Assembly (NCBI RefSeq): GCF_039654945.1
Contig: NW_027361676.1
Span: 49,290,001 to 49,354,000, forward strand
DNA: 64,000 nt
Source: Dendrobates tinctorius
Lineage: Eukaryota
Reading direction: 5' to 3'
Positions 8,892-64,000 of this stretch are shown here, one piece after another; within the stretch, counting starts at the first letter, position 1, and every line of letters begins with the position of its first letter. Made by a program: the position numbers and the translations under genes. A model generated the notes under the pieces. That model had not been told where the DNA came from. It did not search any database and worked only from the letters and a program-made list of their open reading frames with translations.

Positions 8892-9040
8892 TATCCCATG
8901 CCGTCCATAGCTGGAAGTGAGAAGAACCGATGTCATAGCCCTATCCCATGCCGTCCATAGCTGGAAGTGAGAAGAACCGATGTCATAGCCCTATCCCATG
9001 CCATCCATAGCCGGAAGTGAGAAGAGTCGATGACACAGCC
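8892..9040. repeat. 50-bp tandem repeat x3
   Basis: TATCCCATGCCGTCCATAGCTGGAAGTGAGAAGAACCGATGTCATAGCCC starting at 8892, 8942 and 8992. Confidence 0.95.
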
Positions 9041-9071: not shown

Positions 9072-11977
9072 CAGGGCTGTGGAGTCAGAGTCGTGGAGTC
9101 GGAGTTAGTTTTGGTCGGAGTCGGTAGAAATGTACCGACTCAGACTCCAGCTTTAAAAAAATGTATTAATATTTCATAATTGAACTTTCATATGAATTTT
9201 ATAAATGTTACTCAAATATATATGTCCTATCAAACTATGAACAGTGATAAGCAGTTCTGCTGGAGATAGAGACATTTCTTACTTCTTGTGTGTCACTGTT
9301 CTCCACTGCCCTTATCTAATCTTATACTTGGTTAACCTCATGCTGCCCCAACCCCCCTACTTACAATGTATGAAACTGAAAGTGAAAATGTGTTGCAAAT
9401 TCTTAGTAGTGTAGCTCCTCCTCTAGACTAGATCATAGTCTTCCAAGCATCTCACAGCTGCCTGCTACTCAGAAGAGGAAGACTGTAAGAAGTATTATCC
9501 TTTCAACAAACTTTGCATCAGTTAACTGTGAGTACATGAGGAATAATAACAGTATTACTGACCACTATATCAGTTGTACGACCTGGCAATAATTTTGTAC
9601 AATTGTTTTTAGGAAAAACAATTGTCATTTGGATTGTGAATGCAGAATTAAAAACCTGAGAATGTCAAAGAAGCATCACATTAAATCAGCTGTATTTGAA
9701 CATTTCACCATCACTCAAGATAGAAAACATTATGTCTGTCAGTGTATGACAAATGATCCAGACGAAAACAAATGCTGTGAAGCCAAGATGAGTGCATATT
9801 CAGGCAAAGATAAAAATGCTCCTACCAGAGCTTCTAATCTAAAGAGACATTTACAGCGCTTTCATCCAGAAGTACTGAAAGCAGTGGATGAGAAAGACTG
9901 CATCCAAACCAATGAACCAGTGCCCAGCTCTTCCAGCCAAACAAAGGAGCAGAGAACTTTGCAGCCATCAGTTGCAAGATATTTTGTCAGTGACAAAGTT
10001 ACTGTGACAATGACAGTAGATACATTTAAAAAACAGATCATAGAGCTTGTTGTAAAGGATAGTGTGCCTATTTCATTATTTTCACGACCAGCTTTTATGT
10101 GTCTGAATGGGGAAATGGCCCGCAAGCTTGGTGTTTCTCTGGAGAGAGAGAGAGAATTAGAAAATTAGTAATCGAAGAAGCTTTTAAACAAAAGGAAGAA
10201 CTTAAAAAATATCTCAAGGGACGCTTTCTGTTTCTTAAAATGGATGCCTGCACACGTCACAGAGTGAACTATTTTGCCATCAATGTCCAATTTGTTTGTG
10301 ACAAAAATGAAATAGTTACCAAGACATTGGCAGTAAAAGACACCAAAGCTCATCACACCAGTGAGTTTCTCCAGGTCTTGGTGGAAAAGGTTCTGCAAGA
10401 CGATGAACGTAAAAAAGAGCAAGTTCTTTCTGTCGTAACGGACAGTGCTTCAAATATTATAAGTACTACTAAGCTAATGAATGAGTGTAATGGTGACCAG
10501 CAGCTAGAAGAACATTCTGGGTCCACAGACACAGAAATGTTTGAAATAGAGGAACACAGTATTGTAACTGAGGAGCAAACTGAAGTTGCTTCAGATGAAC
10601 AGCAACATAATAGTTTAGATGATCTTGTTGAAAATGTGTCAATATGTTCTTTCATTCATCACATGCGCTGTGTTGTGCATACGCTACAGCTGGCTATAAG
10701 AGACAGTCTGCAAGAAGGACATGCTGCTGCACTGATTGGCAAAGTGAGAAAATTGGCTACTGTTGCCAGAACCCCTAAAGTTGACTCAATTTCGAAGAGA
10801 CGTGCTGGAAAAGGGGCAATTGATCAAGCCACACGATGGGGCAGTACTTACTTAATGATTCAGCGCTTGGTTGAACTGAAAACCTTTCTTGTAGACATGG
10901 CTAACCCTCAACTGACGCTAAATGAAAGTCAGTGGAATCAGGTGACTGAGCTGGAAAAATTGCTAGAGCACCCATTTACAGTGACTAAAAAATTACAAGC
11001 AGAGGACTTAACTCCAGGTATTTTCTTAAAGGAGTGGAAGAACCTGACGTTTCGCCTGTCCCAAAGAGGAGGGTTAATTGCAAGTGGCATTGCTACATCA
11101 ATGAAACGGAGAGAGGAGCTACTATTACAAAATAACATTCTTTTGGCAGCTGTTTATGTAGACCCAATGCATCGGATTCTTCTAGATGATCAACAGCTAA
11201 GTAAAGGAAAAGAAGCTCTGTTTGAAATAGCAGTAAGGATGAAAGGGTTGCAGAACAGTCAGGAGGAACAAGAAGAATTTGGTCGTCCTGCCACATCTTC
11301 ACCCTCATCATCAACTGATGAAGAATTTAATTTCGAAAAATATTTGGATCACAAGGACCGTGCAAAGCGTTCCCGCATAGAAGAAGAGTCATCCCCATCA
11401 AGGAACACAGCCAGTACATTTCAGCAGAATTTTTCATGTGCACTAAAAGAAATTGAGAAATTTGACCGTTCATCAAAAATAACAGTGCAACAAGCGATTC
11501 CTCTGTATCCTGACATTGTCAGAGATGTTGCCCGAGTGGTTACTGCTTTGCCACCAACACAAGTTAGTGTAGAGAGGTTGTTCTCTGCTCTCAAAATAAT
11601 TAGATCAGATTTGAGGGCATCCATGAAGGAGGATCTGACAGAGGCAATACTTTTTTCTGAGGACAAATTTATAGATTTCTTCTTCTTAACTGCATAAAAG
11701 TGTTTATTGCATATTTACTTACAGTTTAGAAAAGTTTATAAAAGTTATTTGCTATATTCTAATTGTATTCTAATAAATGTAGTTTTTGCTCTAAGTGGTC
11801 TGATTACTTAAATGATGGTGAGAAACTGAATAAGCACGATGTTTAATATTTTACAACAGTAAATTTGTTGTTATGAATTGGCCATTTATGAAGGAGTCGG
11901 AGCCGGAGTCTGAGTCGGAGCCTGATAAAATCCAGGAGTCGGAGTCGCAACTGTGGCTTACCGACTCCACAGCCCTG
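9072..11977 (+). mobile_element. Full-length hAT DNA transposon (2906 bp)
   Basis: 15-bp TIR CAGGGCTGTGGAGTC / GACTCCACAGCCCTG; perfect 8-bp TSD GTATCAAT (9064-9071, 11978-11985); subterminal GGAGTC repeats; internal transposase. Confidence 0.96.
9662..11674 (+). pseudogene. hAT transposase (BED zinc finger, DDE, hATC dimerisation domain), frameshifted
   Basis: BED-like SAVFEHF...C..C...SNLKRHLQRFH; LKMD, VVTD, CVVH, TRWGS and PPTQVSVERLFS motifs. Frame break in the (GA)7 run at 10142-10155 and a probable second in the T6 run at 11651-11656. Confidence 0.9.
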
Positions 11978-15290: not shown

Positions 15291-15358
15291 CAGGGCTGTG
15301 GAGTCGGTAAGCCAAACCTCCGACTCCTCAATTTCCCTGACTCTGACTCTTGACTCCC
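15291..15358. mobile_element. End fragment of the hAT MITE family related to 9072-11977
   Basis: CAGGGCTGTGGAGTCGGTAAGCCA is identical to the reverse complement of the right end of the autonomous hAT. Confidence 0.8.
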
Positions 15359-15790: not shown

Positions 15791-16936
15791 ATCGGTACCA
15801 TTTTCAGGCACGTGACATTTTTTGATTGCTTTTTATTCCGATTTTTGGGACGCAGAATGAACTAAAACCAGCGTTTCATGAATTTCTTTTGGGGGGGGTG
15901 CGTTTACACCGTTCCACGTGCGGTTAAATTGATAAAGCGGTTTTATTCTTCGGGTCAGTACGATTACAGCGATACCTAATTTAGGTCTTTTTTTATGTTT
16001 TTGTCGGTTTTTTGCAATAAAAACAATTTTATATAAAAAAATTATTTTTGTATCGCTTTATTCTGTGAGCTATAACTCTTTTTATTTTTTTGCGGATGAC
16101 GCTGTGTGGCGGCTCGTTTTTTGCGGGACAAGATGACGTTTTCAGCGGTACCATGGATATTTATATGCGTCTTTTTGATCGCGCGTTATTACACTTTTTG
16201 TTCGGTGGTGTGATAATAAATCATTATTTTTTGCTTCGTTTTTTATTTTTATTTTTTAAGGGGTTCGCTAAAGGGGTTAACTAATGGGACAGTTTTATAG
16301 GGCGGGTCGCTACGGACGCGGCGATACCAAATATGTGTACTTTTTTTTTTTTTTTTTTTTTAATTTATGTTTAACACTTTTTTTTTTTTTTTTTTTTTTT
16401 TAAACTACTTTATTACCTTGTCCCAGGTGGGACATCACTGTCCTTTGACAGATTGCTGATCTGTCACATCACAGATCACTGTGACAGATCAGCGATCTGT
16501 CACAGGCAGTTCTGCAGACTTACTCATGCTTGCGCTTTGCAGGCAGTGAGGAAGTCAGCTCCCTACAGGCCCCCGAAGGCCCCCGTCGCCATCTTGGATC
16601 CGGGGGCCTGTAGGGAAAGAGACCCCCGCAGCAGTGCTGCACATTGCGCTGCTGTGGGGGGCTCAGGGAAGCACGGAGGGAGCCCCCTCCCTGCCGATGC
16701 TTCCCTTTAACCCCCGGTACACCGCGATCGCGTTTGATCGCGGTGTACAAGGGGTTAACGTGACCGCCCCTGACACATTGTGCCGGGTGTCAGCTGTGAT
16801 AATCAGCTGACACCCGGCCGCGATCAGCGGCGCTCACCACGTGGGCGCCGCTGATCGCTGGGACGTAATATTCCGTACATGGTAATTAGGTCCAGGGTCA
16901 CATGGATGGAATATTACGTCCATTGTAGGTAAGGGG
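15787..16936 (+). mobile_element. 3' part of piggyBac-like non-autonomous element
   Basis: High identity to ~58968-60200; ends AAGGGG|TTAA. Confidence 0.8.
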
Positions 16937-19023: not shown

Positions 19024-21196
19024 TGTGACGAGGTCAGCTTACGCTGAGTCGATTTCTTTAGAGTGGGCCCTCTGGGTCGTGGCACCCACCCACCTAGGGC
19101 GAGCTGACCTTGTGAGGAACCACCCCCTATACAGGGAGTCTCAGGGGCAAGACCAAGGGGGTGAGCCACCACGACTGCTGGAATCAGATGGCCGGCTCAA
19201 GTAGACACTAGGTACGAGTGTCTGACGACAAAGGACGTGCAGGAAACAAGACAAGACAATACGTGAATTCAAGGTATCTTCATTAAGGCAAATTCAGGAT
19301 AACATTAAGTGCAAAACGTGATGACAGGCAAACACAGCAAGGTGCGTGCGTGGCGCTCCAAGGTCCATGGCATGGTACGTGCCAGAAGGTAAGCCCGGTT
19401 ACCGGCAAGGACACGATGGCATCGGACTCCGGACAGCTGGCAAGGATCAGGGCATCAGGCTGCGGACACCAGCTCCGGACATCAGGCCGCAGTCTTAATG
19501 CTTACGATCTCTGGCAGTGATGGCAGGTTCCGGGAATCCAGCAGGCAAACCACGGTACAGGACAAGGTGCGTGTGTAGGGGACACGCAAGGTTCAACGTG
19601 CAAAGTACGGTGCGTGTGTAGGGGACACGCCAGGGTTCAAAGTTCAACATACGAGACAGGGTGCGTGTGTAGAGACATGCCAGGGTTCAAATTCCAAGGT
19701 AAGGTCCTGCGCGTGCCGAGGGACATGCCAGGGTCAGGGTACAAGGCAAGGTCCTGCGCGTGCCGAGGGGCACGCCAGGGTCAAGGTTCAAGGCAGAGTC
19801 CTGCGCGTGCAGAGGGGCACGCCAGGGTCAAGGTTCAAGGCAGAGTCCTGCGCGTGCAGAGGGGCACGCCAGGGTCAGGGTTCAAGGCAGAGTCCTGCGC
19901 GTGCAGAGGGGCACGCCAGGGTATAGGCTAGGACCTGTGCGTGCTAGAGGGCACGACAGGGTACATGGAAAGACCTGCGCGTACTTTTACAGATGCACGG
20001 GGAGGTATGCCACGGGGCAGGCGAGGGCCTGCGCGTGCTAATAGAGGAGCACGCAAACACAGTGCAGAGACAGCGTGGGTGCAAGGACGCACAGAGAGCA
20101 CGGCTGGGGCACTGGCTAGCTGGTCGGGCTGCAGCACAGACAGGCGGGCAAGACTCCAGCGAACCCGGCTGGAGCATAACAGGCGACACAGCTGTCACTG
20201 GCCGACGAGCATGGCTGAGGCACAAACAGGAGGCTAGGAAGGCCAGGCGCATGCAAAGGGCACACGAAGAAACAAGGCAAAGCGAGGCTAGAAACAAGGT
20301 AAGACAAGGTACAGGGCAAGGAGCAGAACCACAGAGTCAGGTCAGAACGAGAACAGAGCTAGCAGCGGAGCGTAGGCCGAAGCCCAAAGCCGGGTCAAGG
20401 GGGAGACCTTGAGACTAGCCCTGGAATGTGCCAGAGAGCACAAAAGGTAAGGGAGGAGGAATGCTGCGTGTGCCAGGAGGCACAACAGAGCACCATAAGT
20501 AAGAGCAAGGAAGAACAAGCAAAGACAGAGAACATAGGAAGGACCACAAGGCAAAGCATAGCAAAGGCAAGACATGGCAAAGCAGAGAGCACAGGAAGGA
20601 CTACAAGTCCAAGCATGACAGAGAAAAAGCATGGCACAAAGGACAACACAAGACAAGGCACGGGACAAGAGGCAGAGTACAAGCACAGAGAGTGTGCAGA
20701 GACGCACTACAGGGCAGAGTGCAGGTGCACAGAATACAGATAGCAACCAAGCAGGCATGCAGGGAAGCAACACGATACTCAGGCCCCGACCATAGGAAGG
20801 GGCGGTCTGATATAGGGCATTAGCACCTGCACTTCCAGGTCAGGACCAGGGGAGAACTTCCGGTTCAGATCCTCCATGATCATAGAGAGCGTTGCTAGAT
20901 CAAACTGGGCTGGACCATAGAGAAGGTCACATGATCAGGGCCTCCAGGAATACAGAGAGAATTGCAGAATCAGAACAGAGATGGATGGTTACCTAGCAAC
21001 GGCGTGCAGCCATGAGGTAAGGCGCGCGTGCACACTGCTCCAGGCATCTTGCTGCACAACAGTCACGAAGTGCGTGTGCACGCAGCACATTGCTTCCAGG
21101 GATCTTGCAGCATGAGACATAATGGGCATGAGAATTCAGTACACGTGCACACTGCTCCAAGGGTCATGCGGCACAACAGACATGGCGGGCATGACA
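19024..21196. mobile_element. Large solo LTR-like element (2173 bp) with internal minisatellite
   Basis: TGT...ACA termini; flanks CGTAT/CATAT (4/5 match, CpG-type change); strong purine strand bias. Confidence 0.7.
19560..19990. repeat. 47-bp GC-rich minisatellite
   Basis: GTCCTGCGCGTGCAGAGGGGCACGCCAGGGTCAAGGTTCAAGGCAGA at 19704, 19751, 19798, 19845 and 19892, plus degenerate flanking units. Confidence 0.92.
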
Positions 21197-26664: not shown

Positions 26665-28295
26665 CAGTTAGGTCCATATATATTTGGACAGAGACAACAT
26701 TTTTCTAATTTTGGTTCTAGACATTGCCACAATGAATTTTAAACAAAACAATTCAGATGCAGTTGAAGTTCAGACTTTCAGCTTTCATTTGAGGGTATCC
26801 ACATTAAAATTGGATGAAGGGTTTAGGAGTTTCAGCTCCTTAACATGTGCCACCCTGTTTTTAAAGGGACCAAAAGTAATTGGACAGATTAAATAATTGT
26901 AAATAAAATGTTCATTTCTAGTACTTGGTTGAAAACCCTTTGTTGGCAATGACTGCCTGAAGTCTTGAACTCATGGACATCACCAGATGCTCTGCCAGGC
27001 CTTCACTGCGGTGGTTTGCAGTTGCTGTTTGTTTGTGGGCCTTTCTGTCTGAAGTTTAGTCTTTAACAAGTGAAATACATGCTCAATTGGGTTGAGATCA
27101 GGTGACTGACTTGGCCATTCAAGAATATTCCACTTCTTTGCTTTAATAAACTCCTGGGTTGCTTTGGCTTTATGTTTTGGGTCATTGTCCATTTATAGTA
27201 TGAAATGATGACCAATCAGTTTGGCTGCATTTGGCTGGATCTGAGCACACATTATGGCTCTGAATACCTCAGAATTCATTCGGCTGCTTCTGTCCTGTGT
27301 CACATCATCAATAAACACTAGTGACCCAGTGCCACTGGCAGTCATGCATGCCCAAGCCATCACACTGCCTCCGCCGTGTTTTACAGATGATGTGGTATGC
27401 TTTGGATCATGAGCTGTACCACACCTTGGCCATACTTTTCTCTTTCCATCATTCTGGTAGAGGTTGATCTTGGTTTCATCTGTCCAAAGAATGTTCTTCC
27501 AGAAATGTGCTGGCTTTTTTAGATGTTTTTTAGCAGCGTCCAGTCTAGCCTTTTTATTCTTGATGCTTATGAGTGGCTTGCACCATGCAGTGAACCCTCT
27601 GTATTTACTTTCATGCAGTCTTCTCTTTATGGTAGATTTGGATATTGATACGCCTACCTCCTGGAGAGTGTTGTTCACTTGGTTGGCTGTTGTGAAGGGG
27701 TTTCTCTTCACCATGGAGATTATTCTGCTATCATCCACCTCTGTTGTCTTCCGTGGGCGCCCAGGTCTTTTTGCATTGATGAGTTCACCAGTGCTTTCTT
27801 TCTTTCTCAGGATGTACCAAACTGTAGATTTTGCCACTCCTAATGTTGTAGCAATTTCGCGGATGGTTTTTTTTCTGTTTTTGCAGCTTAAGGATGGCTT
27901 GTTGCACCTGCATGGAGAGCTCCTTTGACCGCATGTTTCCTTCATAGTAAAACCTTCCAAATGCAAGCACCACACCTCAAATCAACTCAACTCCAGGCCT
28001 TTTATCTGCTTAATTGAGAATGACATAACGAAGGGATTGCCCACATTTGTACATGAAATAGCCTTGGAGTCAATTGTCCAATTACTTTTGGTCCCTTTAA
28101 AAACAGTGGCACATGTTAAGGAGCTGAAACTCCTAAACCCTTCATCCAATTTTAATGTGGATACCCTCAAATGAAAGCTGAAAGTCTGAACTTCAACTGC
28201 ATCTGAATTGTTTTGTTTAAAATTTATTGTGGTAATGTCTAGAACCAAAATTAGAAAAATGTCTGTCTCTGTCCAAATATATATGGACCTAACTG
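26665..28295 (-). mobile_element. Full-length Tc1 (DD34E) transposon, 1631 bp, defective transposase
   Basis: TA TSDs and ~220-bp TIRs beginning CAGTTAGGTCCATATATATTTGGACAGAGACA. Transposase starts at ATG 27934 (MRSKELS...) with WTDETK, DNDPKH and SPDLNPIE (34 spacing). Frameshift in the T run near 27870 and in-frame stop at 27193-27195. Confidence 0.95.
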
Positions 28296-35989: not shown

Positions 35990-38228
35990 ATGGATCTGGT
36001 CCAGACATAAAAATACACAAAGAAAATGGGAGACATTTATTACCATCCTGAATAGGACCTGTGCACAATATATACCGTACGGGAATAAACATGCGAGAAA
36101 TAGGAGGAAACCACTATGGCTAAATAGAGCTGTAAGGGGCGCAATAAGAGATAAAAATAAAGCATTTAGAGAATTAAAGCAAGTAGGTAGTGATGAGGCA
36201 TTAAATAAATACAGAAGATTAAATAAATTCTGTAAAAAACAAATCAAGACAACAAAGATTGAGACAGAGACACTCATTGCCAGAGAAAGTAAAAATAATC
36301 CCAAAATATTCTTTAACTACATAAATAGTAAGAAACTAAAAAATGATAGTGTTGGCCCCCTTAAAAATTAGTCTGGGTGAAATGGTGGATGAGGAAAAAG
36401 CCAATATGCTAAATGACTTTTTTTCAACAGTGTTTACACAAGAAAATCCCATGACTGATAACATGATCAGGGATAAAAATTCTCCATTAAATGTCACCTG
36501 CTTAACCCAGCAGGAAGTACGGCGGCGTCTAAAAATCACTAAAATTGACAAATCCCCGGGCCCGGATGGGATACACCCCTGAGTACTGCAAGAATTAAGC
36601 ACAGTCATAGATAGACCATTATTTTTAATCTTTAAAGATTCCATAATTACAGGGTCTGTACCACAGGAATGACGTATAGCAAATGTGGTGCCAATATTCA
36701 AAAAGGGGACAAAAACTGAACTCGGAAATTATAGGCCAGTAAGTTTAACCTCAACTGTGGGTAAAATCCTGGAGGGTTTTCTAAGAGATACTATACTGGA
36801 GTATCTGGAGAAGAATAACCTCATGACCCAATATCAACATGGGTTTACAAGGGACCGTTCCTGTCAGACTAATCTGATAAGCTTTTATGAAGAGGTAAGT
36901 TCCGGACTGGACCAAGGGAATGCAGTGGACGTGGTGTACATGGACTTTTCAAAAGCTTTTGATACGGTGCCACACAAAAGGTTGATACATAAAATGAGAA
37001 CAATGGGGATAGGGGAAAATATGTGTAGGTGGGTTAAGAACTGGCTCAGGGATAGGAAACAAAGGGTGGTTATTAATGGAGCACACTCGGACTGGGTCAC
37101 GGTTAGCAGTGGGGTACCACAGGGGTCAGTTTTGGGCCCGCTTCTTTTTAACAAATTTATTAATGACCATGTAGGGGGCATAGAGAGTAGAATTTCAATA
37201 TTTGCAGATGACACTAAACTCTGCAGGGTAATCAATACAGAGGAGGACAATTTTATATTACAGGAGGATTTATGTAAACTAGAAGCTTGGGCTGATAAAT
37301 GGAAAATGAGCTTTAATGGGGACAATTGTAAGGTCATGCACTTGGATAGAACGAACAAGATGTATAATTATGTGCTTAATTGTAAAACACTGGGCAAAAC
37401 TGTCACTGAAAAAGACCTGGGTGTATGGGTGGACGACAAACTCACATTTAGTGGCCAGTGTCAGGCAGCTGCTGCGAAGGCAAATAAAATAATGGGATGC
37501 ATTAAAAGAGGCATAGATGCTCATGAGAACATAATTTTGCCTCTATATAAGTCACTAATGCGACCACACTTGGAATACTGCGTGCAGTTCTGGTCTCGGG
37601 TGTATATGAAAGACATTGCTGAACTGTAGCGGGTGCAGAGAAGAGCGACCAAGGTTATTAGGGAACTAGGGGGTGTGCAATACCAAGACAGGTTATTACA
37701 CTTGGGGTTATTTTGTTTGGAGAATCGAAGGCTTAGGGGTGATCTTATTACAATGTATAAATATATGCGGGGACAGTACAAAGACCTTTCTAATGATCTT
37801 TTTACTCTTAGACCTGTGAGGGGACAAGGGGGCATCCTCTACGTCTGGAGGAAAGAAGGTTTAAGCATAGTCAGACGCGGATTCTTTACTGTAAGAGCAG
37901 TGAGACTATGGAACTCTCTGCCATATGATGTTGTAATGAGTGATTCCCTAATAAAATTTAAGAAGGGACTGGATGCCTTTCTTGAAAAGTATAATATTAC
38001 AGGGTATATACACTAGTCTCCTTAATATTGCGTTGATCCAGGGAGCTAGTCTGATTGCCGTATGTGAAGTCGGGAAGGAATTTTTTTCCCCAATGTGAAG
38101 CCTACTGTTTGCCACATGGTTTTTTTTTTTGCCTTCCTCTGGATCAACATGTTTAGGGCAAGTTAGGATAGGATATGGGTTGAACTAGATGGACTTAGTC
38201 TCCCTTCAACCTTAATAACTATGTTACC
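35990..38228 (+). mobile_element. CR1-clade LINE, 5'-truncated, ORF2 reverse transcriptase pseudogene
   Basis: KPLWL, KSPGPDGIHP, NYRPVSLTS, YMDFSKAFD, GVPQGSVLGP, FADD, RPHLEYCVQFW and WNSLP motifs; stops near 36580, 36670 and 37627 plus frameshifts; 3' tail ...AACCTTAATAACTATGTTAC. Confidence 0.95.
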
Positions 38229-40251: not shown

Positions 40252-40560
40252 CCGTATTTTTCGGATTGTAAGACACATTTTTTTCTCGAAAAAAATGTGG
40301 GGGGGGGGGAATGGGGGTGTATTGTATAATCCGAATGTAGCTCAATTGGGGGGTGGCTGTGGTGAAACGAGGTCCAGGAGGCAGGGCAGTGGAGTGCTGG
40401 AAGCTGTGCGCCCCGGGCAGGGAGGGGGTGGGTGTTCCGGCTTTTGCAAAACGTCGCGAGTCCCTGCACTTTCCATCCTTTTTATTGTGGCGGACTGTGG
40501 GAAAATGGCCGCCGGAGACGGCACATGCGCAGACTGAGACTTCGGCTCCCGAGTCACCAC
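40252..40560. mobile_element. Tigger/pogo-like MITE fragment
   Basis: CCGTATTTTTCGGATTGTAAGACAC terminus with an internal inverted motif TTGTATAATCCGAA. Confidence 0.5.
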
Positions 40561-41488: not shown

Positions 41489-41792
41489 AAGGGCTGTGGA
41501 GTCGGTAAGCCAAACCACAGACTCCTGACTCCTCGATGTCCCTGACTCCAACCCAACAGCACTGCCTCACTACTGAGCATGTACATAAAGTGCAGCACAG
41601 ATTCCTCTGCTAAAAGCAGAGATCCTTCAATCAGGAACAGAACAAACATTAATAGGACATTTTATAACTTTCCCAAATTCTTATGGAAACAACATCTACA
41701 GCACTTCCTGCACTGAACTACCATACAGAATTTATTATATATTTTAGAAGTCTGTCAGTCCATTTTATAATGACTCCAACTCCACAGCCCTC
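41489..41792 (-). mobile_element. 304-bp hAT MITE of the 9072-11977 family (single-unit form of the 62-63 kb satellite)
   Basis: AGGGCTGTGGAGTCGG...ACTCCACAGCCCT TIRs; TSD GGTTATAC/AGTTATAC (7/8); interior is the reverse complement of ~62329-62490. Confidence 0.88.
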
Positions 41793-42214: not shown

Positions 42215-42910
42215 TATGCTGAGTGTATGTATCAAGCCACGCTCACTCCACATAGCTCCACCCACTGGCGGATGAGATCGGGGTTGCAGAAAGTGTGGGA
42301 CGCGGGTGGAGAGTGGAGCTGCGAGGGAGAGAGCGGGATAGTGTGTAGAGAGCAGGGCTGTGGAGGTAGAACGTGATGGCACATGGAGAGCGGGGTTGCA
42401 GAGGCAGAGAGCGGGACAGCGGGTGGGGAGCGGGACAGAAGGAGAGAGCTTGAGAGCGGGACGCAGGTGGAGAAGCTGGGCTGCTGAGGGAGAGAGCGGG
42501 ACTGCCAGTGAAAACAGGCTGCAGAAGGAGAGGGCGAGATGGCTAGTGGAGACGGGCTGCTGAGGTAAATATCAAAGCTGTGGAGGGAGAATGCGGGATG
42601 GCGATTGGAGTGTGGGGCTGCGGAAGGATAGAGCGTGACGGAGGATGGAGAGCTGGGCTACAGAGGGAGACAGTGGGCTGCGGATCGAAAGCGGGGCTGC
42701 TGAGGAAGAAAGCGGGACAGCCAGTGGAGACGGGCTGCGGAGGGCGAGAGCGGGACGGTGGATGGAGAGCAGGGCCTCGGAGGAAGAATGTGGGGCGGTG
42801 GGTGGAGAGCTGGGCTTTGGAGGGAGAGGTGGGACTGTGAGTGAAGAGCGGGGCTGCGGAGAGAGAGCGGGACGGCAATTAGTTACTATGCTCGGGCTTT
42901 TCAGCTAATA
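42211..42910 (+). mobile_element. Purine-rich degenerate repeat, possibly a non-autonomous Helitron-like element
   Basis: Starts TA-run/GCTGAGTGTATGTAT, has recurring GAGAGCGGG units, ends CGGGCTTTTCAGCTA; classification uncertain. Confidence 0.35.
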
Positions 42911-55984: not shown

Positions 55985-58530
55985 TCAGGTTCAATTTTTT
56001 TTATTTTACCAAGGGTAACAGGAGAAATTGAACTGCAAAAGTTATTGTGCAATTTGTCCTGAGTACGCAGATACCTGATATGTGGGGGGGAACGACTGTT
56101 TCGGCGCATGGCAGAGCTCAGAATGGAAGGAGCGCCGTTTGACTTTTTCAATGCAAAATTGGCTGGAATTCAGATTGGACGCCATGTCACGTTTGGAGAG
56201 TCCCTGATGTACCTAAACAGTGGAAACCCCCTACAAGTGACCCCATTTTGGAAACTAGACCCCCCAAGGAACTTATCTAGATATGTGGTGAGAACTTTGA
56301 ACCCACAAGGGCTTTACAGAAGTTTATAACGTACAGCGGTACAATTAAAAAATCATATTTTTTCCACAAAAATGATCTTTTCACCCCAATTTTTATTTTC
56401 CCAAGGGTAACAGGACCCTAAAAGTTATTGTGCAATTTGTCCTGAGTACGCTGATACCCCACATGTGGGGGTAAACCACTATTTGGGCGCATGGCAGAGC
56501 TCGGAAGGGAAGCAGCGCCATTTGACGTTTTTGGCTGGAATTGAGATCGGACACCATGTCGCGTTTGGAAAACCCCTGATGTACCAAAACAGTGGAAACC
56601 CCCCACAAATGACACCATTTTGGAAACTAGACACCCTAAGGAACTTATCTAGATGTGTGGTGAGAACTTTGAACCCCCATGGGCTTCACAGAAGTTTATA
56701 ACATAAAGCCATACAATTAAAAAATCATATTTTTTCCACAAAAATGATCTTTTCACCCTCAATTCTTATTTTTCCAAGGGTAACAGGACCCTAAAAGTTA
56801 TTGTGCAATTTGTCCTGAGTACGCTGATACCCCACATGTGGGGGTAAACCACTATTTGGGGGCATGGCAGAGCTCGGAAGGGAAGCAGCGCCATTTGATG
56901 TTTTTGGCTGGAATTGAGATCGGACACCATGTCGCGTTTGGAAAACTCCTGATGTACCAAAACAGTGGAAACCCCCCACAAATGACACCATTTTGGAAAC
57001 TAGACCCCCTAAGGAACTTATCTAGATGTGTGGTGAGAACTTTGAACCCCCATGGGCTTCACAGAAGTTTATAACATAAAGCCATACAATTAAAAAATCA
57101 TATTTTTTAAACAAAAATGATCTTTTCACCCTCAATTCTTATTTTTCCAAGGGTAACGGGACCCTAAAAGTTATTGTGCAATTTGTCCTGAGTACGCTGA
57201 TACCCCACATGTGGGGGTAAACCACTATTTGGGCGCATGGCAGAGCTCGGAAGGGAAGCAGCGCCATTTGACGTTTTTGGCTGGAATTGAGATCGGACAC
57301 CATGTCGCGTTTGGAAAACCCCTGATGTACCAAAACAGTGGAAACCCCCCACAAATGACACCATTTTGGAAACTAGACCCCCTAAGGAACTTATCTAGAT
57401 GTGTGGTGAGCACTTTGACCCCCCCAGTGCTTCACAGAAGTTTACAACGCCCGGGCGTGAAAATAAAAAATTCGTATTTTTTCCACAAACATGATCTTTT
57501 AGTCACCATTTTTTTATTTTCCCAAGGGTACCAGGAGAAATTGGACCCCAAAAGTTGTTGTCCAATTTGTCCTGAGTATGCTGATACCCCATATGTGGGA
57601 GAAAACTACTGTATGGGCACACGTCGGGGCTCGGAAGGGAAGTAGTGACGTTTTGGAATGCAGACTTTGATGGAATGGTCTGCGGGTGTGATATTGCCTT
57701 TGGAGAGCCCCTAATGTACCTAAACAGTGGAAACCCCCCACAAATGACACCATTTTGTAAACTAGACCCCCCAAGGAACTTATCTAGATGTGTGGTGAGC
57801 ACTTTGACCCCCCCAGTGCTTCACAGAAGTTTACAACGCCCGGGCGTGAAAATAAAAAATTCGTATTTTTTCCACAAACATGATCTTTTAGTCACCATTT
57901 TTTTATTTTCCCAAGGGTACCAGGAGAAATTGGACCCCAAAAGTTGTTTTCCAATTTGTCCTGAGTACGCTGCTACCCCATATGTGGGAGAAAACTACTG
58001 TATGGGCACACGTCAGGGCTCGGAAGGGAAGTAGTGACGTTTTGGAATGCAGACTTTGATGGAATGGTCTGCGGGTGTCATGTTGCCTTTGGAGAGCCCC
58101 TGATGTACCTAAACTATTGAAACTCCCCACAAGTGACCCCATTTTGGACACTAGACCCCCCACGGAACTTATCTAGATGTGTGGTGAGCACTTTGAACCC
58201 CCAAGTGCTTCACAGAAGTTTATAACACTCGGACGTGAAAATAAAAAAATCATTTTTTTTCCACAAAAATGATATTTTTGCCCCCAATTTTTTATTTTCC
58301 TAAGGGTAACAGGAGAAATTGGACCCCAAAAATTGTTTTGCAATTTGTCCTGAGTAGGCTGATACCCTACATGAGGGGGTAAAACACTGTTTGGGCGCAT
58401 AGCAGAGCTTGGAAGGGAAGGAGCACCATTTGACTTTTTCAACTCAGAATTGGCTGGAATTGAGATCAGACGCCATGTTGCATTTGGAGAGCCCCTGATG
58501 TGCCCAAACAGTGGAAACCCCCAATTCTAA
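55985..58530. repeat. ~7-unit tandem array of 373-389-bp monomers
   Basis: CAATTTGTCCTGAGTA recurs 7 times; near-identical spurious ORFs spaced 373 bp (56418/56791/57164) and 389 bp (57514/57903). Confidence 0.95.
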
Positions 58531-58724
58531 CTCCAACCCGAACCCCANNNNNNNNNNNNNNNNNNNNNNNNNNNNNNNNNNNNNNNNNNNNNNNNNNNNN
58601 NNNNNNNNNNNNNNNNNNNNNNNNNNNNNNNNNNNNNNNNNNNNNNNNNNNNNNNNNNNNNNNNNNNNNNNNNNNNNNNNNNNNNNCAACACACCCCTAG
58701 CCCTAACCCTAGCCCTAACCCTAA
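58527..58724 (+). repeat. Telomere-like (CCCTAA/CCCTAG) repeats flanking assembly gap 58548-58686
   Basis: CCCTAGCCCTAACCCTAGCCCTAACCCTAA after the gap; degenerate hexamers before it. Confidence 0.8.
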
Positions 58725-61003
58725 TGGAAAAATGGAAATAAATACATTTTTTTTATTTTATTATTTTTCCCTAACTAAAGGGGTGATAACGGGGGGTTTG
58801 ATTTACTATTTATGGCGGTTTTTATGTTTGGCGGCTGTCGCACGCTAAAAGACGCTTTTTATTGTAAAAATAGTTTTTGCATCACCACATATTGAGAGCT
58901 ATAATTTTTCCGTATTTTGACCCACCGAGTCATGTGAGGTCTTATTTTTTGCGGGACGAGTTGACGTTTTTATTGGTACCATTTTCGGGCACGTGAAATT
59001 TTTTGATCGCTTTTTATTCCGATTTTTGGGACGCAGAATGAACAAAAACCAGCGTTTCATGAATTTCTTTTGGGGGGGGTGCGTTTACACCGTTCCGCGT
59101 GCGGTAAAATTGATAAAGCGCTTTTATTCTTCGGGTCGGTACGGTTACAGCGATACCTCATTTAGGTCGTTTTTTTATGTTTTTGTCGGTTTTATGCAAT
59201 GAAAACTATTTTATATAAAAAATAATTATTTTTGCATCGCTTTATTCTGCGAGTTATAACTTTTTTATTTTTTTGCTGATGATGCTGTGTGGCGGCTTGT
59301 TTTTTGCGGGACAAGATGACGTTTTCAGCGGTACCATGGATATTTATATGCGTCTTTTTGATCTCGCGTTATTGCACTTTTTGTTTGGCGGTATGATAAT
59401 AAATCATTATTTTTTGCTTCGTTTTTTATTTTTATTTTTTAAGGGGTTCGCTAAAGGGGTTAACTAATGGGACAGTTTTATAGGGCAGGTCGTTACGGAC
59501 GCGGCGATACCTAATATGTGTACATTTATTGTTTTTTTTTTTTTATTATTTTAAAAAAATGAATTTATTGGGGAATATTTTTTTTTTTTTTTTTACTAAT
59601 TTATTTGGCGATTTTTTTTAATTTATTTTTACACTTTTTTTTTAATTTTTTTTTACTTTATTACATAGTCCCAGGTGGGACATCACTGTCCTGTGACAGA
59701 TCGCTGATCTGTCACATCACAGATCACTGTGACAGATCAGCAATCTGTCACAGGCAGTGCACAAGGCTTCCTCATGCCTGCGCTTTGCAGGCACTGAGGA
59801 AGCCAGCTTCCCCAGGCCCCCGAAGGCCCCCGTCGCCATCTTGGATTCGGGGGCCTGGAGGATAGGAGTCCCCCGCAGCAGCGCTGCACATTGCGCTGCC
59901 GTGGGGGGCTCAGGGAAGCACGGAGGGAGCCCCCTCCCTGCCGATGCTTCCCTTTAACTCCCGGTACACCGCGATCGCGTTTGATCGCGGTGTGCAAGGG
60001 GTTAATGTGTCGGGGGCGGTCCGTGAGCGCCCCTGACACATTGTGCCGGGTGTCAGCTGTGATAATCAGCTGACACCCGGCCGCGATCAGCGGCGCTCAC
60101 CACGTGGGCGCCGCTGATCGCGGTAGACGTACTATCCCGTCCCCGGTCATACGGGCCCGGGTACCGTGGACGGGATAGTACGTCTCATGTCAGGAAGGGG
60201 TTAAAGGAACAGAATTCCAGAGAGAGAGAATTTTTATTTGTCAGAAAGGCTGTGGGGGTTAAATTCAAGGAAGGCAAATTGTTCCGGGCATGCTCAGTTT
60301 GAAAAAATGGAATCCAGCGATGGATTCCGTCTTTTGACGGACAGCGACGGATCCTCTTATCATAGGCTTCCGTTATATCCAACAGCGGATGGCGCTGGAT
60401 CCGTCGCTGTCTGACTTTTTGACCTACACAAAAAACGTTACTTTGTCCGTTGTCTCCGGCTGACGGACAAAGAATTTTATGACTGATCCGTCAAATGACG
60501 GATGAAACGGACGACAATCCGTCGCTAGTACAAGTCTATGAGAAAAAATGGATCCAGCGGGCAAATTTGCTGGATCCGTTTTTTTCTCAAAGCGATGGAT
60601 TTTGACTGACGCCAAAAGACTGAGTGTGAAAGAGGCCTAAGAACCTTGTACTTCTGGGGATTTGATTTTTTTCAGCTTTACAAGTTTCAGTTTTACATCG
60701 GACATAAGAAAGTCATCACTATTTTAAATCTCATTATTTGTTTTAGTATGGTGCTTCACAGAACATATTACCTTGTATGTGTTTCAATAAGTTAAAGGGG
60801 TTGCCAAGTTTTTAAATGGTTAAAATTAGAATGTGCTTATAAAAACATGCAACTTTGCAATTGCCCATTTATGAATAACCCACTGTTTTCAAGATGGAGA
60901 TATTTTCAATTTTAGAGTAGATCTTGTTACCTAGGTTATAGACCACCTTAGATTCTCGGGACTAGCTCTTTCCCTTAGGCTTCGCTACTAGGCTCTATGA
61001 TTA

Positions 61004-61270: not shown

Positions 61271-62169
61271 AAAACTGGCACTGGAATTTCAGCTGAATGA
61301 GGCATTGGTCTGATAGCTGACGGTAGATTTGGATATCCTATTTTACTTTTATTTTTCCTGTTAAATCCTGATGTTTTCACTAAACAGAAGTAACAGTCTG
61401 TGGAATGACTTTTTTGCTCTCTCCACACCATGGGGATACCAAATGCCAACTTTTCACGTGTTCCTTTGGTCCACATCCGTAAACTCTCGACACACTGCTT
61501 GCACACTATGTGAGGGGCCCATGGCTTATCTTGATCACCGAGTTTTACTTTAAAATGTGCAAAATATGCTTGTTTGACAAATGCACTGATGTTTGCCCTT
61601 TGAACTGGAATGGTGAAAACACCACAAATATAGCAGAAGGAGTCAGGGTTGTTTAGGCATTTACGACGAGAGGAAGAAGGAGCAGACATGATCTGAAACA
61701 AAGAAAATATGTACATAAGTAAATAAAACACTGAGATGGAAAGTTACAAGCTTTGAAAACTAACAAAGAAAAAAATCATAAAAGATATATAAATTACAAC
61801 TAAGCGCCCAATGTAAAGAGAAAAGCTATCACAAATCCTATTTATTCCCACTATGATACATTTTTTGTGTAAAGATATTGATAATTATGACGTATTGGGA
61901 GCTGTACACACCTCTCACCACACTGTCTCAGTTGTGACTACTCTTACAAGTTGCCACGTAGCTCTATATGAGTCGAATTGTACTCAGATAACAAGTCTTA
62001 TTACAGAAATCAGTGCAATTGTGCTTCTATGGCAGGTAAGTTGAGGAGGAAAAACTTGACGTGATAGAAAAAAACTGACAACATTTTTGGAATCAGCATG
62101 CCAATTTTAGTATAAATCAGCTCAAAAACCTAACTCAACAGAACATTTTTTTCAAATTGTTCCCCAGTG
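61271..62169 (-). mobile_element. Chapaev3 (CMC) transposon 5' fragment with Chapa zinc-finger coding region (ATG 61689)
   Basis: Terminus CACTGGGGAAC next to TWA. Protein FCYICG...DQDKPWAPHIVCKQC...WREQKSHSTDCYFC fits the Chapa C/H pattern; truncated at ~61271. Confidence 0.78.
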
Positions 62170-62226
62170 TAATGCAGTGGATTTTATGCTGCTTATTTAC
62201 TTGCAGAAAAATTCACGCATTTTACA

Positions 62227-63651
62227 CAGAACTATGAAGTCTGAATCATGGAGTCTGAATCTGTGTCCATTTTGCTGTAGTCGGAGTTGAAGTCGGTATA
62301 AAAGGGACCGACTCTTAAAAAAAATTGGGTTCAGTGCAGGAAGTGCTGTAGATGTTTTCATAAGAATTTGGGAAAGTTATAAAATGTCCTATAAATGTCT
62401 GTTCCTGATCTAAGGATCTCTGCTTTTAGCTGAGATGAATCTGGGCTGCACTTTTTATGTATATGCTCAGTAGTGACCAGGGCTGTGGAGTCGTAGCTGA
62501 GATGAATCTGTGCTGCACTTTATGTACATGCTCAGTAGTGAGGCAGGGCTGTGGAGTCGGAGCTGAGATGAAGCTGTGCTGCTCTTTATGTACATGCTCA
62601 GTAGTGAGGCAGGGCTGTGGAGTCGTAGCTGAGATGAGTCTGCTCTGCACGTTATGTACATGCTCAGTAGTGACCAGTGCTGTGGAGTTGTAGCTGAGAT
62701 GAATCTGTGCTGCACTTTATGTACATGCTCAGTAGTGAGGCAGGGTTGTGGAGTCATAGATGAGATGAATCTGTGCTGCACTTTATGTACATGCTCAGTA
62801 GTGAGGCAGGGCTGTGGAGTCGTAGCTGAGATGAATCTGTGCTACAGTTTATGTACATGCTCAGTAGTGACCAGTGCTGTGGAGTCGGAGCTGAGATGAA
62901 TCTGTGCTGCACTTTATGTAAATGCTCAGTAGTGACCAGTGCTGTGGAGTCGTAGCTGAGATGAATCTGTGCTGCAGTTTATGTACATGCTCAGTAGTGA
63001 CCAGTGCTGTGGAGTCGGAGCTGAGATGAATCTGTGCTGCACTTTATGTAAATGCTCAGTAGTGACCAGTGCTGAGGAGTCGTAGCTGAGATGAATCTGT
63101 GCTGCACTTTATGTACATGCTCAGTAGTGAGGCAGGGCTGTGGAGTCGTAGCTGAGATGAATCTGTGCTGCAGTTTATGTACATGCTCAGTAGTGGGGCA
63201 GGGCTGTGGAGTTATACCTGAGATGAATCTGTGCTGCACTTTATGCACATGCTCAGTAGTGAGGCAGGGCTGTGGAGTCATAGCTGAGATGAATCTTTGC
63301 TGCACTTTATGTATATACTTAGTAGTGAAGCAGTGCTGTGGGGTCGGAGCTGAGATGAGTCTGCTACACTTTATGTACATGCTCAGTAGTGAGGCAGGGC
63401 TGTGGAGTCGTAGATGAGATGAATCTGTGCTGCACTTTATGTACATGCTCAGTAGTGATCAGTGCTGTGGAGTCATAGCTGAGGTGAATCTGTGCTGCAC
63501 TTTATGTACATGCTCAGTAGAGAGGCAGTGTTGCGGAGTCGGAACTGAGATGAATCTGTGCTGCACTTTATGTACATGCTCAGTAGTGAGGCAGGGCTGT
63601 GGCGGTGACATTGAGGAATCAGTTGTTTGGCTTTCCGACTGCACAACTTTG
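62227..63651 (+). mobile_element. hAT MITE expanded by an internal satellite
   Basis: Degenerate TIRs CAGAACTATGAAGTC / GACTGCACAACTTTG; flanks CATTTACA/ACTTTACA (6/8); homologous to 41489-41792. Confidence 0.8.
62429..63605 (+). repeat. 65-66-bp tandem repeat, ~18 units, each ending in a hAT TIR copy
   Basis: Unit GCTGAGATGAATCTGTGCTGCACTTTATGTACATGCTCAGTAGTGAGG-CAGGGCTGTGGAGTC-GTA; starts at 62429, 62496, 62562, 62628... Confidence 0.97.
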
Positions 63652-64000
63652 ACTTTACAGCACCAGCACTACACTACTTTTGTGAATTTAATACCAAGGC
63701 TCGGTCGCACTTTCTTGCTTTCAGATAGTTATGTGAGATTTTTGGTAAAAACAATTTGAATCGGACCCCCCAGGCTGTTCTACTATTCCGATTGGCTACG
63801 CAATGACCCGTGACCACAGAGATATTTGTATTTTGATGATGGCTCCTTGCTCCCTGGTAGTGTAGGAAATTCATGTTAACAATGCATGTTACAAATGGCT
63901 CCCAATAGTAAAGCGTGCATGCAGCTCTGAAAACCACATATTCATGTGCACCTAATTGTGCCGTTTCTTAGTATCTCTAATGTGCCGCCTCCTCTTCAGT

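What the first reader, a model, noticed from the sequence alone, without database searches (positions are those of the whole stretch)
62227..63651. Satellite forming inside a MITE: ~18 tandem units each carrying the hAT TIR
Seen: three states in one window - autonomous hAT (9072), a 304-bp MITE with one unit (41489) and the same MITE with ~18 units. Many units contain an exact CAGGGCTGTGGAGTC, better preserved than this MITE's own decayed ends. Two variants (GAGGCAGGG, 66 bp; GACCAGTG, 65 bp) occur in runs. Inference: an array of transposase recognition ends that could act as a transposase sink, offer alternative excision ends, or have been amplified through transposase-induced breaks.
Basis: partly seen in the sequence, partly recalled or inferred. 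Interest (0 to 1): 0.7.

Follow-up and report, generated by a model that had tools for sequence, protein, structure and literature searches.

The report
Minisatellite inside an old frog hAT MITE
An old, immobile copy of a small hAT-type jumping gene has had a 66-base internal piece copied head-to-tail 18 times; this is a well-known way for transposons to grow short tandem arrays, and nothing suggests the transposase-site look-alike in each copy is under selection.

Summary
An array at 62427-63602 has a 66-bp period, 17.9 copies and 90% matches. It lies inside a 1,425-bp non-autonomous hAT element (62227-63651) with an 8-bp target-site duplication (7/8) and decayed ends (11/15 each). The window also holds a one-unit 304-bp relative (41489-41792) and a near-full-length hAT (9072-11977, perfect TIRs and duplication, one frame break).

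The functional reading is not supported:
- The 15-bp TIR-like motif is no better conserved than the rest of the unit (5.9% vs 6.0% mismatches, Fisher p=1; rank 32 of 54 windows).
- The one-unit copy carries a gapped version of the motif at the same place, so it is ancestral, not created by the array.
- Each unit has one GGAGTC, whereas the real hAT ends carry clusters of them.
- Unit junctions lie 16 bp inside the motif, not at the cleavage site.
- The CpG at the junction decays about three times faster than average.

Contigs from four organism labels bridge the element's junctions, so the insertion is old. One two-unit duplication is 98.5% identical, so unit number kept changing. Best reading: a neutral, MITE-borne minisatellite of the kind described for Xenopus miDNA4 and Xstir and clam DTC84. 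The scan noted a similar MITE-arm expansion elsewhere in this genome (s1-377025).

The parts
62219..62226 (.). Left copy of the 8-bp target-site duplication (ATTTTACA)
   Evidence: It matches 63652-63659 at 7/8.
62227..62328 (+). Left arm of the non-autonomous hAT element. The decayed TIR is at 62227-62241 (11/15 to CAGGGCTGTGGAGTC).
   Evidence: collinear with the left 100 bp of the hAT at 9072; low contig depth (24-275), so this arm version is rare or diverged.
62329..62426 (+). Non-repeated core shared with the abundant MITE family
   Evidence: 87-89% identical to 41613-41718; summed contig depth about 1e5, against 6-9 for the unique flank, in four organism labels.
62427..63607 (+). 18 tandem units of 64-67 bp. 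Each ends in a TIR-like motif CAG(G/T)GCTGTGGAGTCG. The last unit runs into the right arm.
62823..63082 (+). Youngest visible event: a two-unit block (62823-62952) duplicated as 62953-63082, with 2 differences in 130 bp
   Evidence: units 7/9 and 8/10 are each 98% identical and share diagnostic substitutions.
63608..63651 (+). Right arm. The decayed TIR is at 63637-63651 (11/15).
   Evidence: aligns with the right arms of the 41489 MITE, the hAT and the 15291 fragment.
63652..63659 (.). Right copy of the target-site duplication (ACTTTACA)
41489..41792 (-). One-unit 304-bp MITE of the same family. TIRs match at 14/15 and 13/15. It is flanked by GGTTATAC / AGTTATAC and holds an internal TIR-like motif with a 6-bp insertion.
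9072..11977 (+). Near-full-length hAT transposon (2,906 bp). It has perfect 15-bp TIRs, a perfect 8-bp duplication (GTATCAAT), a BED-finger ORF and a hAT-dimerisation ORF in different frames. GGAGTC repeats are confined to its ends.
15291..15350 (-). Right-end fragment of another non-autonomous hAT relative. It shares the right arm but has no internal TIR-like motif.

Best explanation
The stretch 62227-63651 is an old, no longer mobile insertion of a non-autonomous hAT element (a MITE) in a frog genome. Its family normally carries one copy of a ~66-bp internal segment next to the right arm. That segment ends in a sequence that matches the element's terminal inverted repeat, pointing the same way as the left end.

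In this copy the segment was first duplicated head-to-tail, probably at a 2-3-bp microhomology (AG/GAG). It was then multiplied to 18 units by replication slippage or unequal sister-chromatid exchange, with occasional multi-unit steps. The TIR-like motif is a passenger of the duplicated segment. It looks fresher than the element's own ends only because the unit copies are younger than the insertion.

Shown: the anatomy, the target-site duplication, the ancestral presence of the motif, the lack of extra conservation, the shared old insertion and the recent two-unit step. Inferred: the microhomology start, slippage or unequal exchange as the engine, and neutrality.
For: - Array and units.
- Target-site duplication and decayed ends.
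- With the array reduced to one unit, the element is 310 bp and 85% identical to the 304-bp one-unit copy, which has the motif (with a 6-bp insertion) at the same place.
- TIR columns have 5.9% mismatches against 6.0% elsewhere, p=1. The TIR window ranks 32 of 54.
- The CpG at the unit junction changed in 3 and 4 of 18 units, about 19% against a 6% average, as expected for methylated neutral DNA.
- Units 7-8 and 9-10 form a 98.5% identical two-unit duplicate. Units 2 and 11 are identical. All four variant combinations are present, which points to unequal exchange or conversion.
- 5 of 17 junctions read GAG and 12 read TAG, which matches the two ancestral boundaries.
- Junction-bridging contigs: organism A with 0 mismatches, C about 5.6%, D about 10% or more, B about 12% or more. 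The insertion therefore predates their split.
- Short contigs spanning unit-unit junctions occur in B, C and D at about single-copy depth.
- No Rfam match and no unusual DNA fold.
- The only ORF is a repeat-generated 151-aa frame with no Pfam family.
- The same kind of structure is described for Xenopus miDNA4 and Xstir and other MITEs: PMC12628747 and PMC3879986.
Against: - I could not census the family genome-wide, so I cannot say how many units were already present when this copy inserted.
- Contig depth over the units, summed over bins, is roughly ten times that of the adjacent core. This could mean multi-unit arrays are common in the family. The tool warns that this figure is not a copy number.
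- The element's arms are far more decayed (about 25%) than its core (about 5% from the majority letters). A simple single-age neutral model does not explain that.
- Lack of extra conservation over 18 young copies is a weak test of function.
Confidence: 0.8

Rival explanations
1. The array, or most of it, was already present in the mobile source copy and was carried in by transposition. The family would then include multi-unit subfamilies, as in Xenopus miDNA4, and little happened in situ.
For: - Unit-unit junction contigs occur in all four organism labels, and summed depth over the units exceeds that of the core.
- Mean unit divergence from the consensus (6%) is similar to the A-C flank divergence (5.6%), so most units are old.
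- The published precedent is a family whose copies hold either a single monomer or an array of variable length (PMC12628747).
Against: - This copy's arms are a rare, diverged version (depth 24-275 against 1e5 for the core).
- At least one two-unit duplication is much younger (1.5%) than the insertion.
- The only other family copy in the window has one unit.
- Short contigs cannot count units per copy.
Confidence: 0.15
2. One reading: the 18 TIR-like motifs form a transposase-binding array. It would titrate transposase, offer alternative left ends for excision, or have been amplified by repair of transposase-induced breaks.
For: - 7 units carry an exact 15-bp TIR, and 14 keep the GGAGTC hexamer that clusters only at the hAT's ends.
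- A near-intact hAT with the same TIR lies 50 kb away.
- hAT transposases bind short subterminal repeats multivalently (PMC10368747).
Against: - The motif shows no excess conservation.
- The motif predates the array.
- There is one GGAGTC per 66 bp, against three in the first 50 bp of a real left end. Hermes, Tol2 and Ac need phased subterminal repeats over 100-200 bp.
- Junctions lie 16 bp inside the motif, not at its tip where cleavage would occur.
- None of the 24 loose ends listed (1,622 more were not shown) begins at an internal TIR.
- The CpG in the motif's extension is decaying.
Confidence: 0.04
3. Assembly artefact: the unit number is inflated or invented by mis-assembly of a repeat.
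For: Short-read contigs cannot span the array, so its interior has no independent confirmation here.
Against: - Both junctions are confirmed with 0 mismatches by contigs of organism A at single-copy depth (records 3 and 8).
- The units carry many private substitutions in a non-periodic order, unlike a collapsed or stuttered assembly.
- At 1.2 kb the array is well within long-read length.
Confidence: 0.02

Closest known systems
miDNA4 of Xenopus (Scalvenzi and Pollet 2014, as summarised in PMC12628747)
   Same: A frog MITE whose internal repeat exists as a single monomer or as an array of variable copy number. Microhomologies at the repeat borders are proposed to drive the expansions. Decay of the ends is proposed as the route from MITE to free satellite.
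   Different: miDNA4 is a Tc1/mariner MITE, whereas this one is hAT-derived with an 8-bp duplication. Here the unit includes a copy of the TIR sequence. No free satellite arrays of this unit were shown here.
Xstir / Xmix of Xenopus (Hikosaka and Kawahara 2004, as summarised in PMC12628747)
   Same: MITE, tandem-array and composite MITE-plus-array forms occur in frogs, with the tandem repeat derived from internal MITE sequence. The proposed model involves stem-loops between inverted repeats. Here the repeated segment also abuts an inverted pair: the internal TIR-like motif facing the right TIR.
   Different: It is a different superfamily and unit. The stem-loop here is short, and its predicted fold is no better than shuffled sequence.
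DTC84 tandem-repeat-containing MITE of the clam Donax trunculus (PMC3879986)
   Same: A high-copy composite MITE with a central region built of a variable number of tandem monomers between conserved arms (abstract).
   Different: It is from a mollusc and has a different architecture. I read only the abstract.
Tetris foldback transposon of Drosophila virilis (PMC4079207)
   Same: Tandem repeats that are part of a DNA transposon's inverted-repeat region, which seeded a satellite (title and abstract).
   Different: In Tetris the repeats build the long terminal inverted repeats themselves. Here a single internal TIR look-alike is carried along inside a unit of otherwise unrelated sequence.
Subterminal repeat arrays of hAT ends (Hermes, Ac, Tol2)
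   Same: A short motif (here GGAGTC) is repeated near both ends and absent from the 2.6-kb interior of the hAT, like the BED-domain binding sites of Hermes.
   Different: In the array the motif is spaced once per 66 bp, without the phased cluster next to the TIR that functional ends have.

Membership tests
Non-autonomous hAT element (MITE) | 8-bp target-site duplication | tested here: met
   ATTTTACA / ACTTTACA, 7/8. The one-unit copy also has 7/8. The hAT has 8/8.
Non-autonomous hAT element (MITE) | Terminal inverted repeats and subterminal sequence shared with a transposase-encoding hAT | tested here: met
   Both ends match the hAT's 15-bp TIR at 11/15. The left arm is collinear with the hAT's left 100 bp, and the right arm aligns over about 40 bp. 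The ends are decayed, so this copy is probably immobile.
Non-autonomous hAT element (MITE) | No transposase coding capacity, small size, high copy number | tested here: met
   The only ORF is a repeat-generated 151-aa frame with no Pfam match. The element is 310 bp once the array is reduced to one unit. Core contig depth is about 1e5 against 6-9 for unique flank (a rough indicator only).
Autonomous hAT transposon (the element at 9072-11977) | Intact transposase with BED finger, catalytic core and C-terminal hAT dimerisation domain | tested here: inconclusive
   Dimer_Tnp_hAT scores 23.3 bits (cut-off 21.4). zf-BED scores 18.9 bits, below its 20.6 cut-off. The two ORFs are in different frames and overlap near 10.13-10.17 kb, which means one frame break or an unrecognised intron. 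No match to a solved structure by sequence.
Tandem-repeat-containing MITE (miDNA4 / Xstir / DTC84 kind) | Same family found with one monomer and with arrays, the array lying between MITE arms | tested here: met
   One unit at 41489-41792 and 18 units at 62227-63651, both with arms and target-site duplications.
Tandem-repeat-containing MITE (miDNA4 / Xstir / DTC84 kind) | Variable unit number across many genomic copies | tested here: inconclusive
   Contigs spanning unit-unit junctions occur in four organism labels, and depth over the units is high. Short contigs cannot count units per copy.
Satellite DNA in the strict sense | Long arrays (tens of kb or more) free of transposon arms | tested here: not met
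   At this locus the array is 1.18 kb and sits inside the element. Elsewhere in the genome this was not testable.
Functional transposase-binding array (sink or alternative ends) | Binding-site positions conserved above the rest of the unit | tested here: not met
   15/255 against 52/867 mismatches, Fisher p=1. With the variant columns removed, 2.9% against 4.4%, p=0.36.
Functional transposase-binding array (sink or alternative ends) | TIR accompanied by phased subterminal repeats as at a real end | tested here: not met
   One GGAGTC per unit, against three in the first 46 bp of the hAT's left end. The requirement itself is taken from Hermes, Tol2 and Ac.
Functional transposase-binding array (sink or alternative ends) | Transposase binding, or use of internal ends in transposition | not testable with these tools
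   This needs EMSA or ChIP and a whole-genome census.

The most novel reading that the evidence does not exclude
Because each unit carries an exact or near-exact left-end TIR plus one GGAGTC site, arrays like this could act as multivalent decoys for the octamer-type hAT transposase, or as nested alternative left ends. Transposase nicking at them could feed break-repair expansion. MITE-borne arrays would then both damp and be amplified by the family's own transposase.
Probability: 0.04. Interest if true: 0.55.

Novelty: new member of a known kind. Interest (0 to 1): 0.2.

Why it matters
The locus is a tidy example of how a DNA transposon seeds a tandem array. In one window it shows a near-intact hAT, a one-unit MITE and an 18-unit MITE, at an insertion shared by several related frogs. 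That makes it usable as a dated marker for minisatellite turnover in a giant amphibian genome. It does not open a new question. MITE-to-tandem-repeat conversion is already documented in frogs, bivalves and flies, and the one unusual feature, a TIR look-alike in every unit, behaves as a neutral passenger.

Tried and rejected
- Higher-order repeat: TRF's 197-bp period scores barely above the 66-bp one, and identity is flat across lags 1-6. Rejected.
- Structured RNA or ribozyme in the unit: no Rfam hit at E up to 1. Rejected.
- Hairpin-prone unit: DNA folds of one and two units and of the right arm are no better than shuffles, with z from -0.1 to +1.4. Rejected.
- Coding repeat: the 151-aa minus-strand ORF is a by-product of a stop-free frame and has no Pfam family. 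Rejected.
- The TIR hits at 40382 and 42353 are chance matches in G-rich sequence.
- The many 'joints' that skip from 62404 into late units looked like one-unit copies. They start at a 5-bp indel that this copy has relative to the family, and the remainder can align to any unit. The 'back joints' to 62375 can be short spurious matches of the right arm. I do not count either as evidence.
- Nested insertion of a mini-element (internal TIR to right TIR): no matching 8-bp duplication around it in the one-unit copy.
- Earlier-findings search by sequence was blank.
- I did not run the large protein searches. The transposase's identity is not what the claim rests on.

Full report
**What is there**

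Tandem Repeats Finder reports one array at 62427-63602: period 66, 17.9 copies, 90% matches, score 1851. I cut it into 18 units of 64-67 bp and aligned them. Each unit ends in CAG(G/T)GCTGTGGAGTCG.

The 15-mer CAGGGCTGTGGAGTC, allowing 2 mismatches, occurs 23 times in the window against 0.06 expected. Sixteen of those hits are in the array: 7 exact, 6 with one mismatch and 3 with two. The other relevant hits are:
- the two ends of a 2.9-kb element at 9072-11977;
- the two ends of a 304-bp element at 41489-41792;
- one orphan end at 15291.

Hits at 40382 and 42353 are chance matches in G-rich sequence.

**The element that holds the array**

It runs from 62227 to 63651. Each end matches the TIR at 11 of 15 positions. 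The 8 bp outside are ATTTTACA and ACTTTACA, and a 7/8 match has a chance of about 4e-4.

With the array reduced to one unit the element is 310 bp. It aligns end to end with the reverse complement of the 304-bp element at 85% identity. That element has better ends (14/15 and 13/15) and its own 7/8 duplication.

The two copies differ in the left arm. The array copy keeps a roughly 100-bp arm collinear with the left end of the 2.9-kb hAT. The 304-bp copy has a shorter arm, as if deleted between GGAGTC repeats.

**The hAT at 9072-11977**

- It has perfect 15-bp TIRs and a perfect GTATCAAT duplication.
- A 532-aa ORF carries the hAT dimerisation domain. An upstream ORF has a weak BED-finger match.
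- The two ORFs are in different frames and overlap near 10.13-10.17 kb. The copy is therefore near-intact, not demonstrably autonomous.
- GGAGTC or its complement occurs 4 times in the left 150 bp, 5 times in the right 150 bp and never in the 2.6-kb interior. That is the pattern of hAT subterminal repeats.

**Is the TIR motif special inside the array?**

No, on four counts.
1. Across 17 complete units the 15 TIR columns have 15 mismatches in 255 cells (5.9%). The other columns have 52 in 867 (6.0%), Fisher p = 1.
2. Without the three variant-defining columns the figures are 2.9% and 4.4%, p = 0.36.
3. Among all 15-column windows the TIR window ranks 32 of 54. The best-kept stretch is columns 29-49.
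4. The only CpG of the unit, at the junction just after the motif, changed in 3 and 4 of 18 units. That is about three times the average and is what methylated neutral DNA does.

**Is the motif a product of the array?**

No. The one-unit copy has the same motif at the same place, with a 6-bp insertion. It lies about 60 bp in from the right end and points like a left end.

In one search, the parts of contigs that run on past the motif in several runs continue straight into the right arm. Their consensus agreement is low, and they fit the structure of the one-unit copy. The duplicated segment simply included the motif.

Unit junctions lie just after GGAGTCG, 16 bp inside the motif. A transposase would cut at the motif's outer tip, so the junctions are not at the cleavage position. 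The junction triplet reads TAG in 12 junctions and GAG in 5. These match the two ancestral borders, which is what a start at a 2-3-bp microhomology would give. That is inference.

**Could the motif work as an end?**

By analogy, poorly. In Hermes the BED domains bind short subterminal repeats in a rigid phase with the TIR. Tol2, Tag1 and Ac need 100-200 bp of each end (PMC10368747). A unit offers one GGAGTC followed by unrelated sequence. The real left end has three within 46 bp.

**Age and dynamics**

Mean pairwise identity of units is 89.6%, with no periodicity by lag. Units 2 and 11 are identical and equal the consensus. Units 7-8 and 9-10 form a two-unit block duplicated with 2 differences in 130 bp. 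All four combinations of the two variable sites occur, which fits exchange or conversion between units.

I laid Logan contigs of four runs with four different coded organism labels on 61500-64000. The junctions of the element with its unique flanks are bridged as follows:

| Organism label | Junction bridged | Divergence |
|---|---|---|
| A | both | 0 mismatches, single-copy depth |
| C | right | about 5.6% |
| D | right | about 10% or more |
| B | left | about 12% or more |

The insertion therefore predates the split of these organisms, which fits its decayed ends. Short contigs that span unit-unit junctions occur in B, C and D at about single-copy depth. At least a few tandem units are therefore old or recurrent, while the 98.5% block shows later change.

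The core next to the array has summed depth near 1e5, against 6-9 for unique flank. The family is therefore very abundant. The tool states this figure is not a copy number.

I could not name the organisms myself. Earlier notes of this scan call the genome the dyeing poison frog, which I did not verify. The published assembly paper for that species does not mention MITEs, satellites or tandem repeats.

**Other checks**

- No Rfam family matches at E up to 1.
- DNA folding of the unit, of two units and of the right arm is no better than shuffled sequence.
- A 151-aa ORF on the minus strand is a repeat-generated frame with no Pfam match.

**Comparison with what is known**

A 2025 review summarises two frog precedents (PMC12628747):
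- miDNA4, a Xenopus MITE whose internal repeat exists as one monomer or as arrays. Microhomology is proposed to drive expansion, and end decay to lead to free satellite.
- Xstir, seen as MITE, array and composite forms, with a stem-loop model.

The clam MITE DTC84 and the fly transposon Tetris are further examples. The present case is a hAT-derived member of this kind. The TIR look-alike in each unit is an unusual detail that behaves as a passenger.

**Limits**

- No whole-genome census was possible with these tools, so units per copy across the family and use of internal ends remain open.
- Several 'joints' are alignment side-effects of a 5-bp indel and of short matches. I did not use them.
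- The arms of this copy are much more decayed than its core, which I cannot fully explain.

**Verdict**

The functional interpretation is not supported. This is a neutral MITE-borne minisatellite, a new member of a known kind, and of low interest.

Noticed in passing
window 56036-58522: Large tandem repeat with a period of 373-389 bp, about 6.5 copies and 87% matches. It was not examined further.
   Followed up: no
window 58695-58723: Short interstitial telomere-like repeat (CCCTAG/CCCTAA, 2.4 copies of a 12-mer), just after the 373-bp array.
   Followed up: no
window 8892-9040: A 50-bp unit repeated 3 times at 93%, ending about 30 bp before the left end of the hAT insertion at 9072.
   Followed up: no
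window 10125-10170: The BED-finger frame and the catalytic/dimerisation frame of the hAT overlap in a GA-rich run where both frames read E/R repeats. A single frame change here is all that separates the two ORFs.
   Followed up: partly
window 16432-16504 and 59680-59752: The same 34-36-bp unit occurs as a two-copy tandem at two distant places, probably an internal duplication carried by another dispersed element.
   Followed up: no
window 42479-42875: G-rich minisatellite with nested periods of 19, 38-40 and 117 bp. It lies about 2 kb downstream of a CpG-rich stretch at 40340-40520 that contains an ATG in a promoter-like context.
   Followed up: no
window 19704-19982: GC-rich 47-bp tandem repeat, 4.7 copies at 95%.
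   Followed up: no
window 61500-62123: A moderately repeated element (contig depth about 450-600 in organisms A and C, far higher in B and D) lies about 100 bp upstream of the MITE's left flank. Its copy number seems to differ strongly between the organism labels.
   Followed up: no
window 36685-37629, 27193-27975, 1320-2027: Other transposon ORFs: a reverse transcriptase (RVT_1, E 4e-33) and two Tc1/mariner-type HTH transposase fragments. The window is largely transposon sequence.
   Followed up: partly
window 62227-62241 and 63637-63651: All 4 changes in the left TIR are G to A. The right end has C to T, C to G and G to A changes. None of the left-end changes is in a CpG, so the arms decayed by a route other than CpG deamination. 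The sample is too small to interpret.
   Followed up: no
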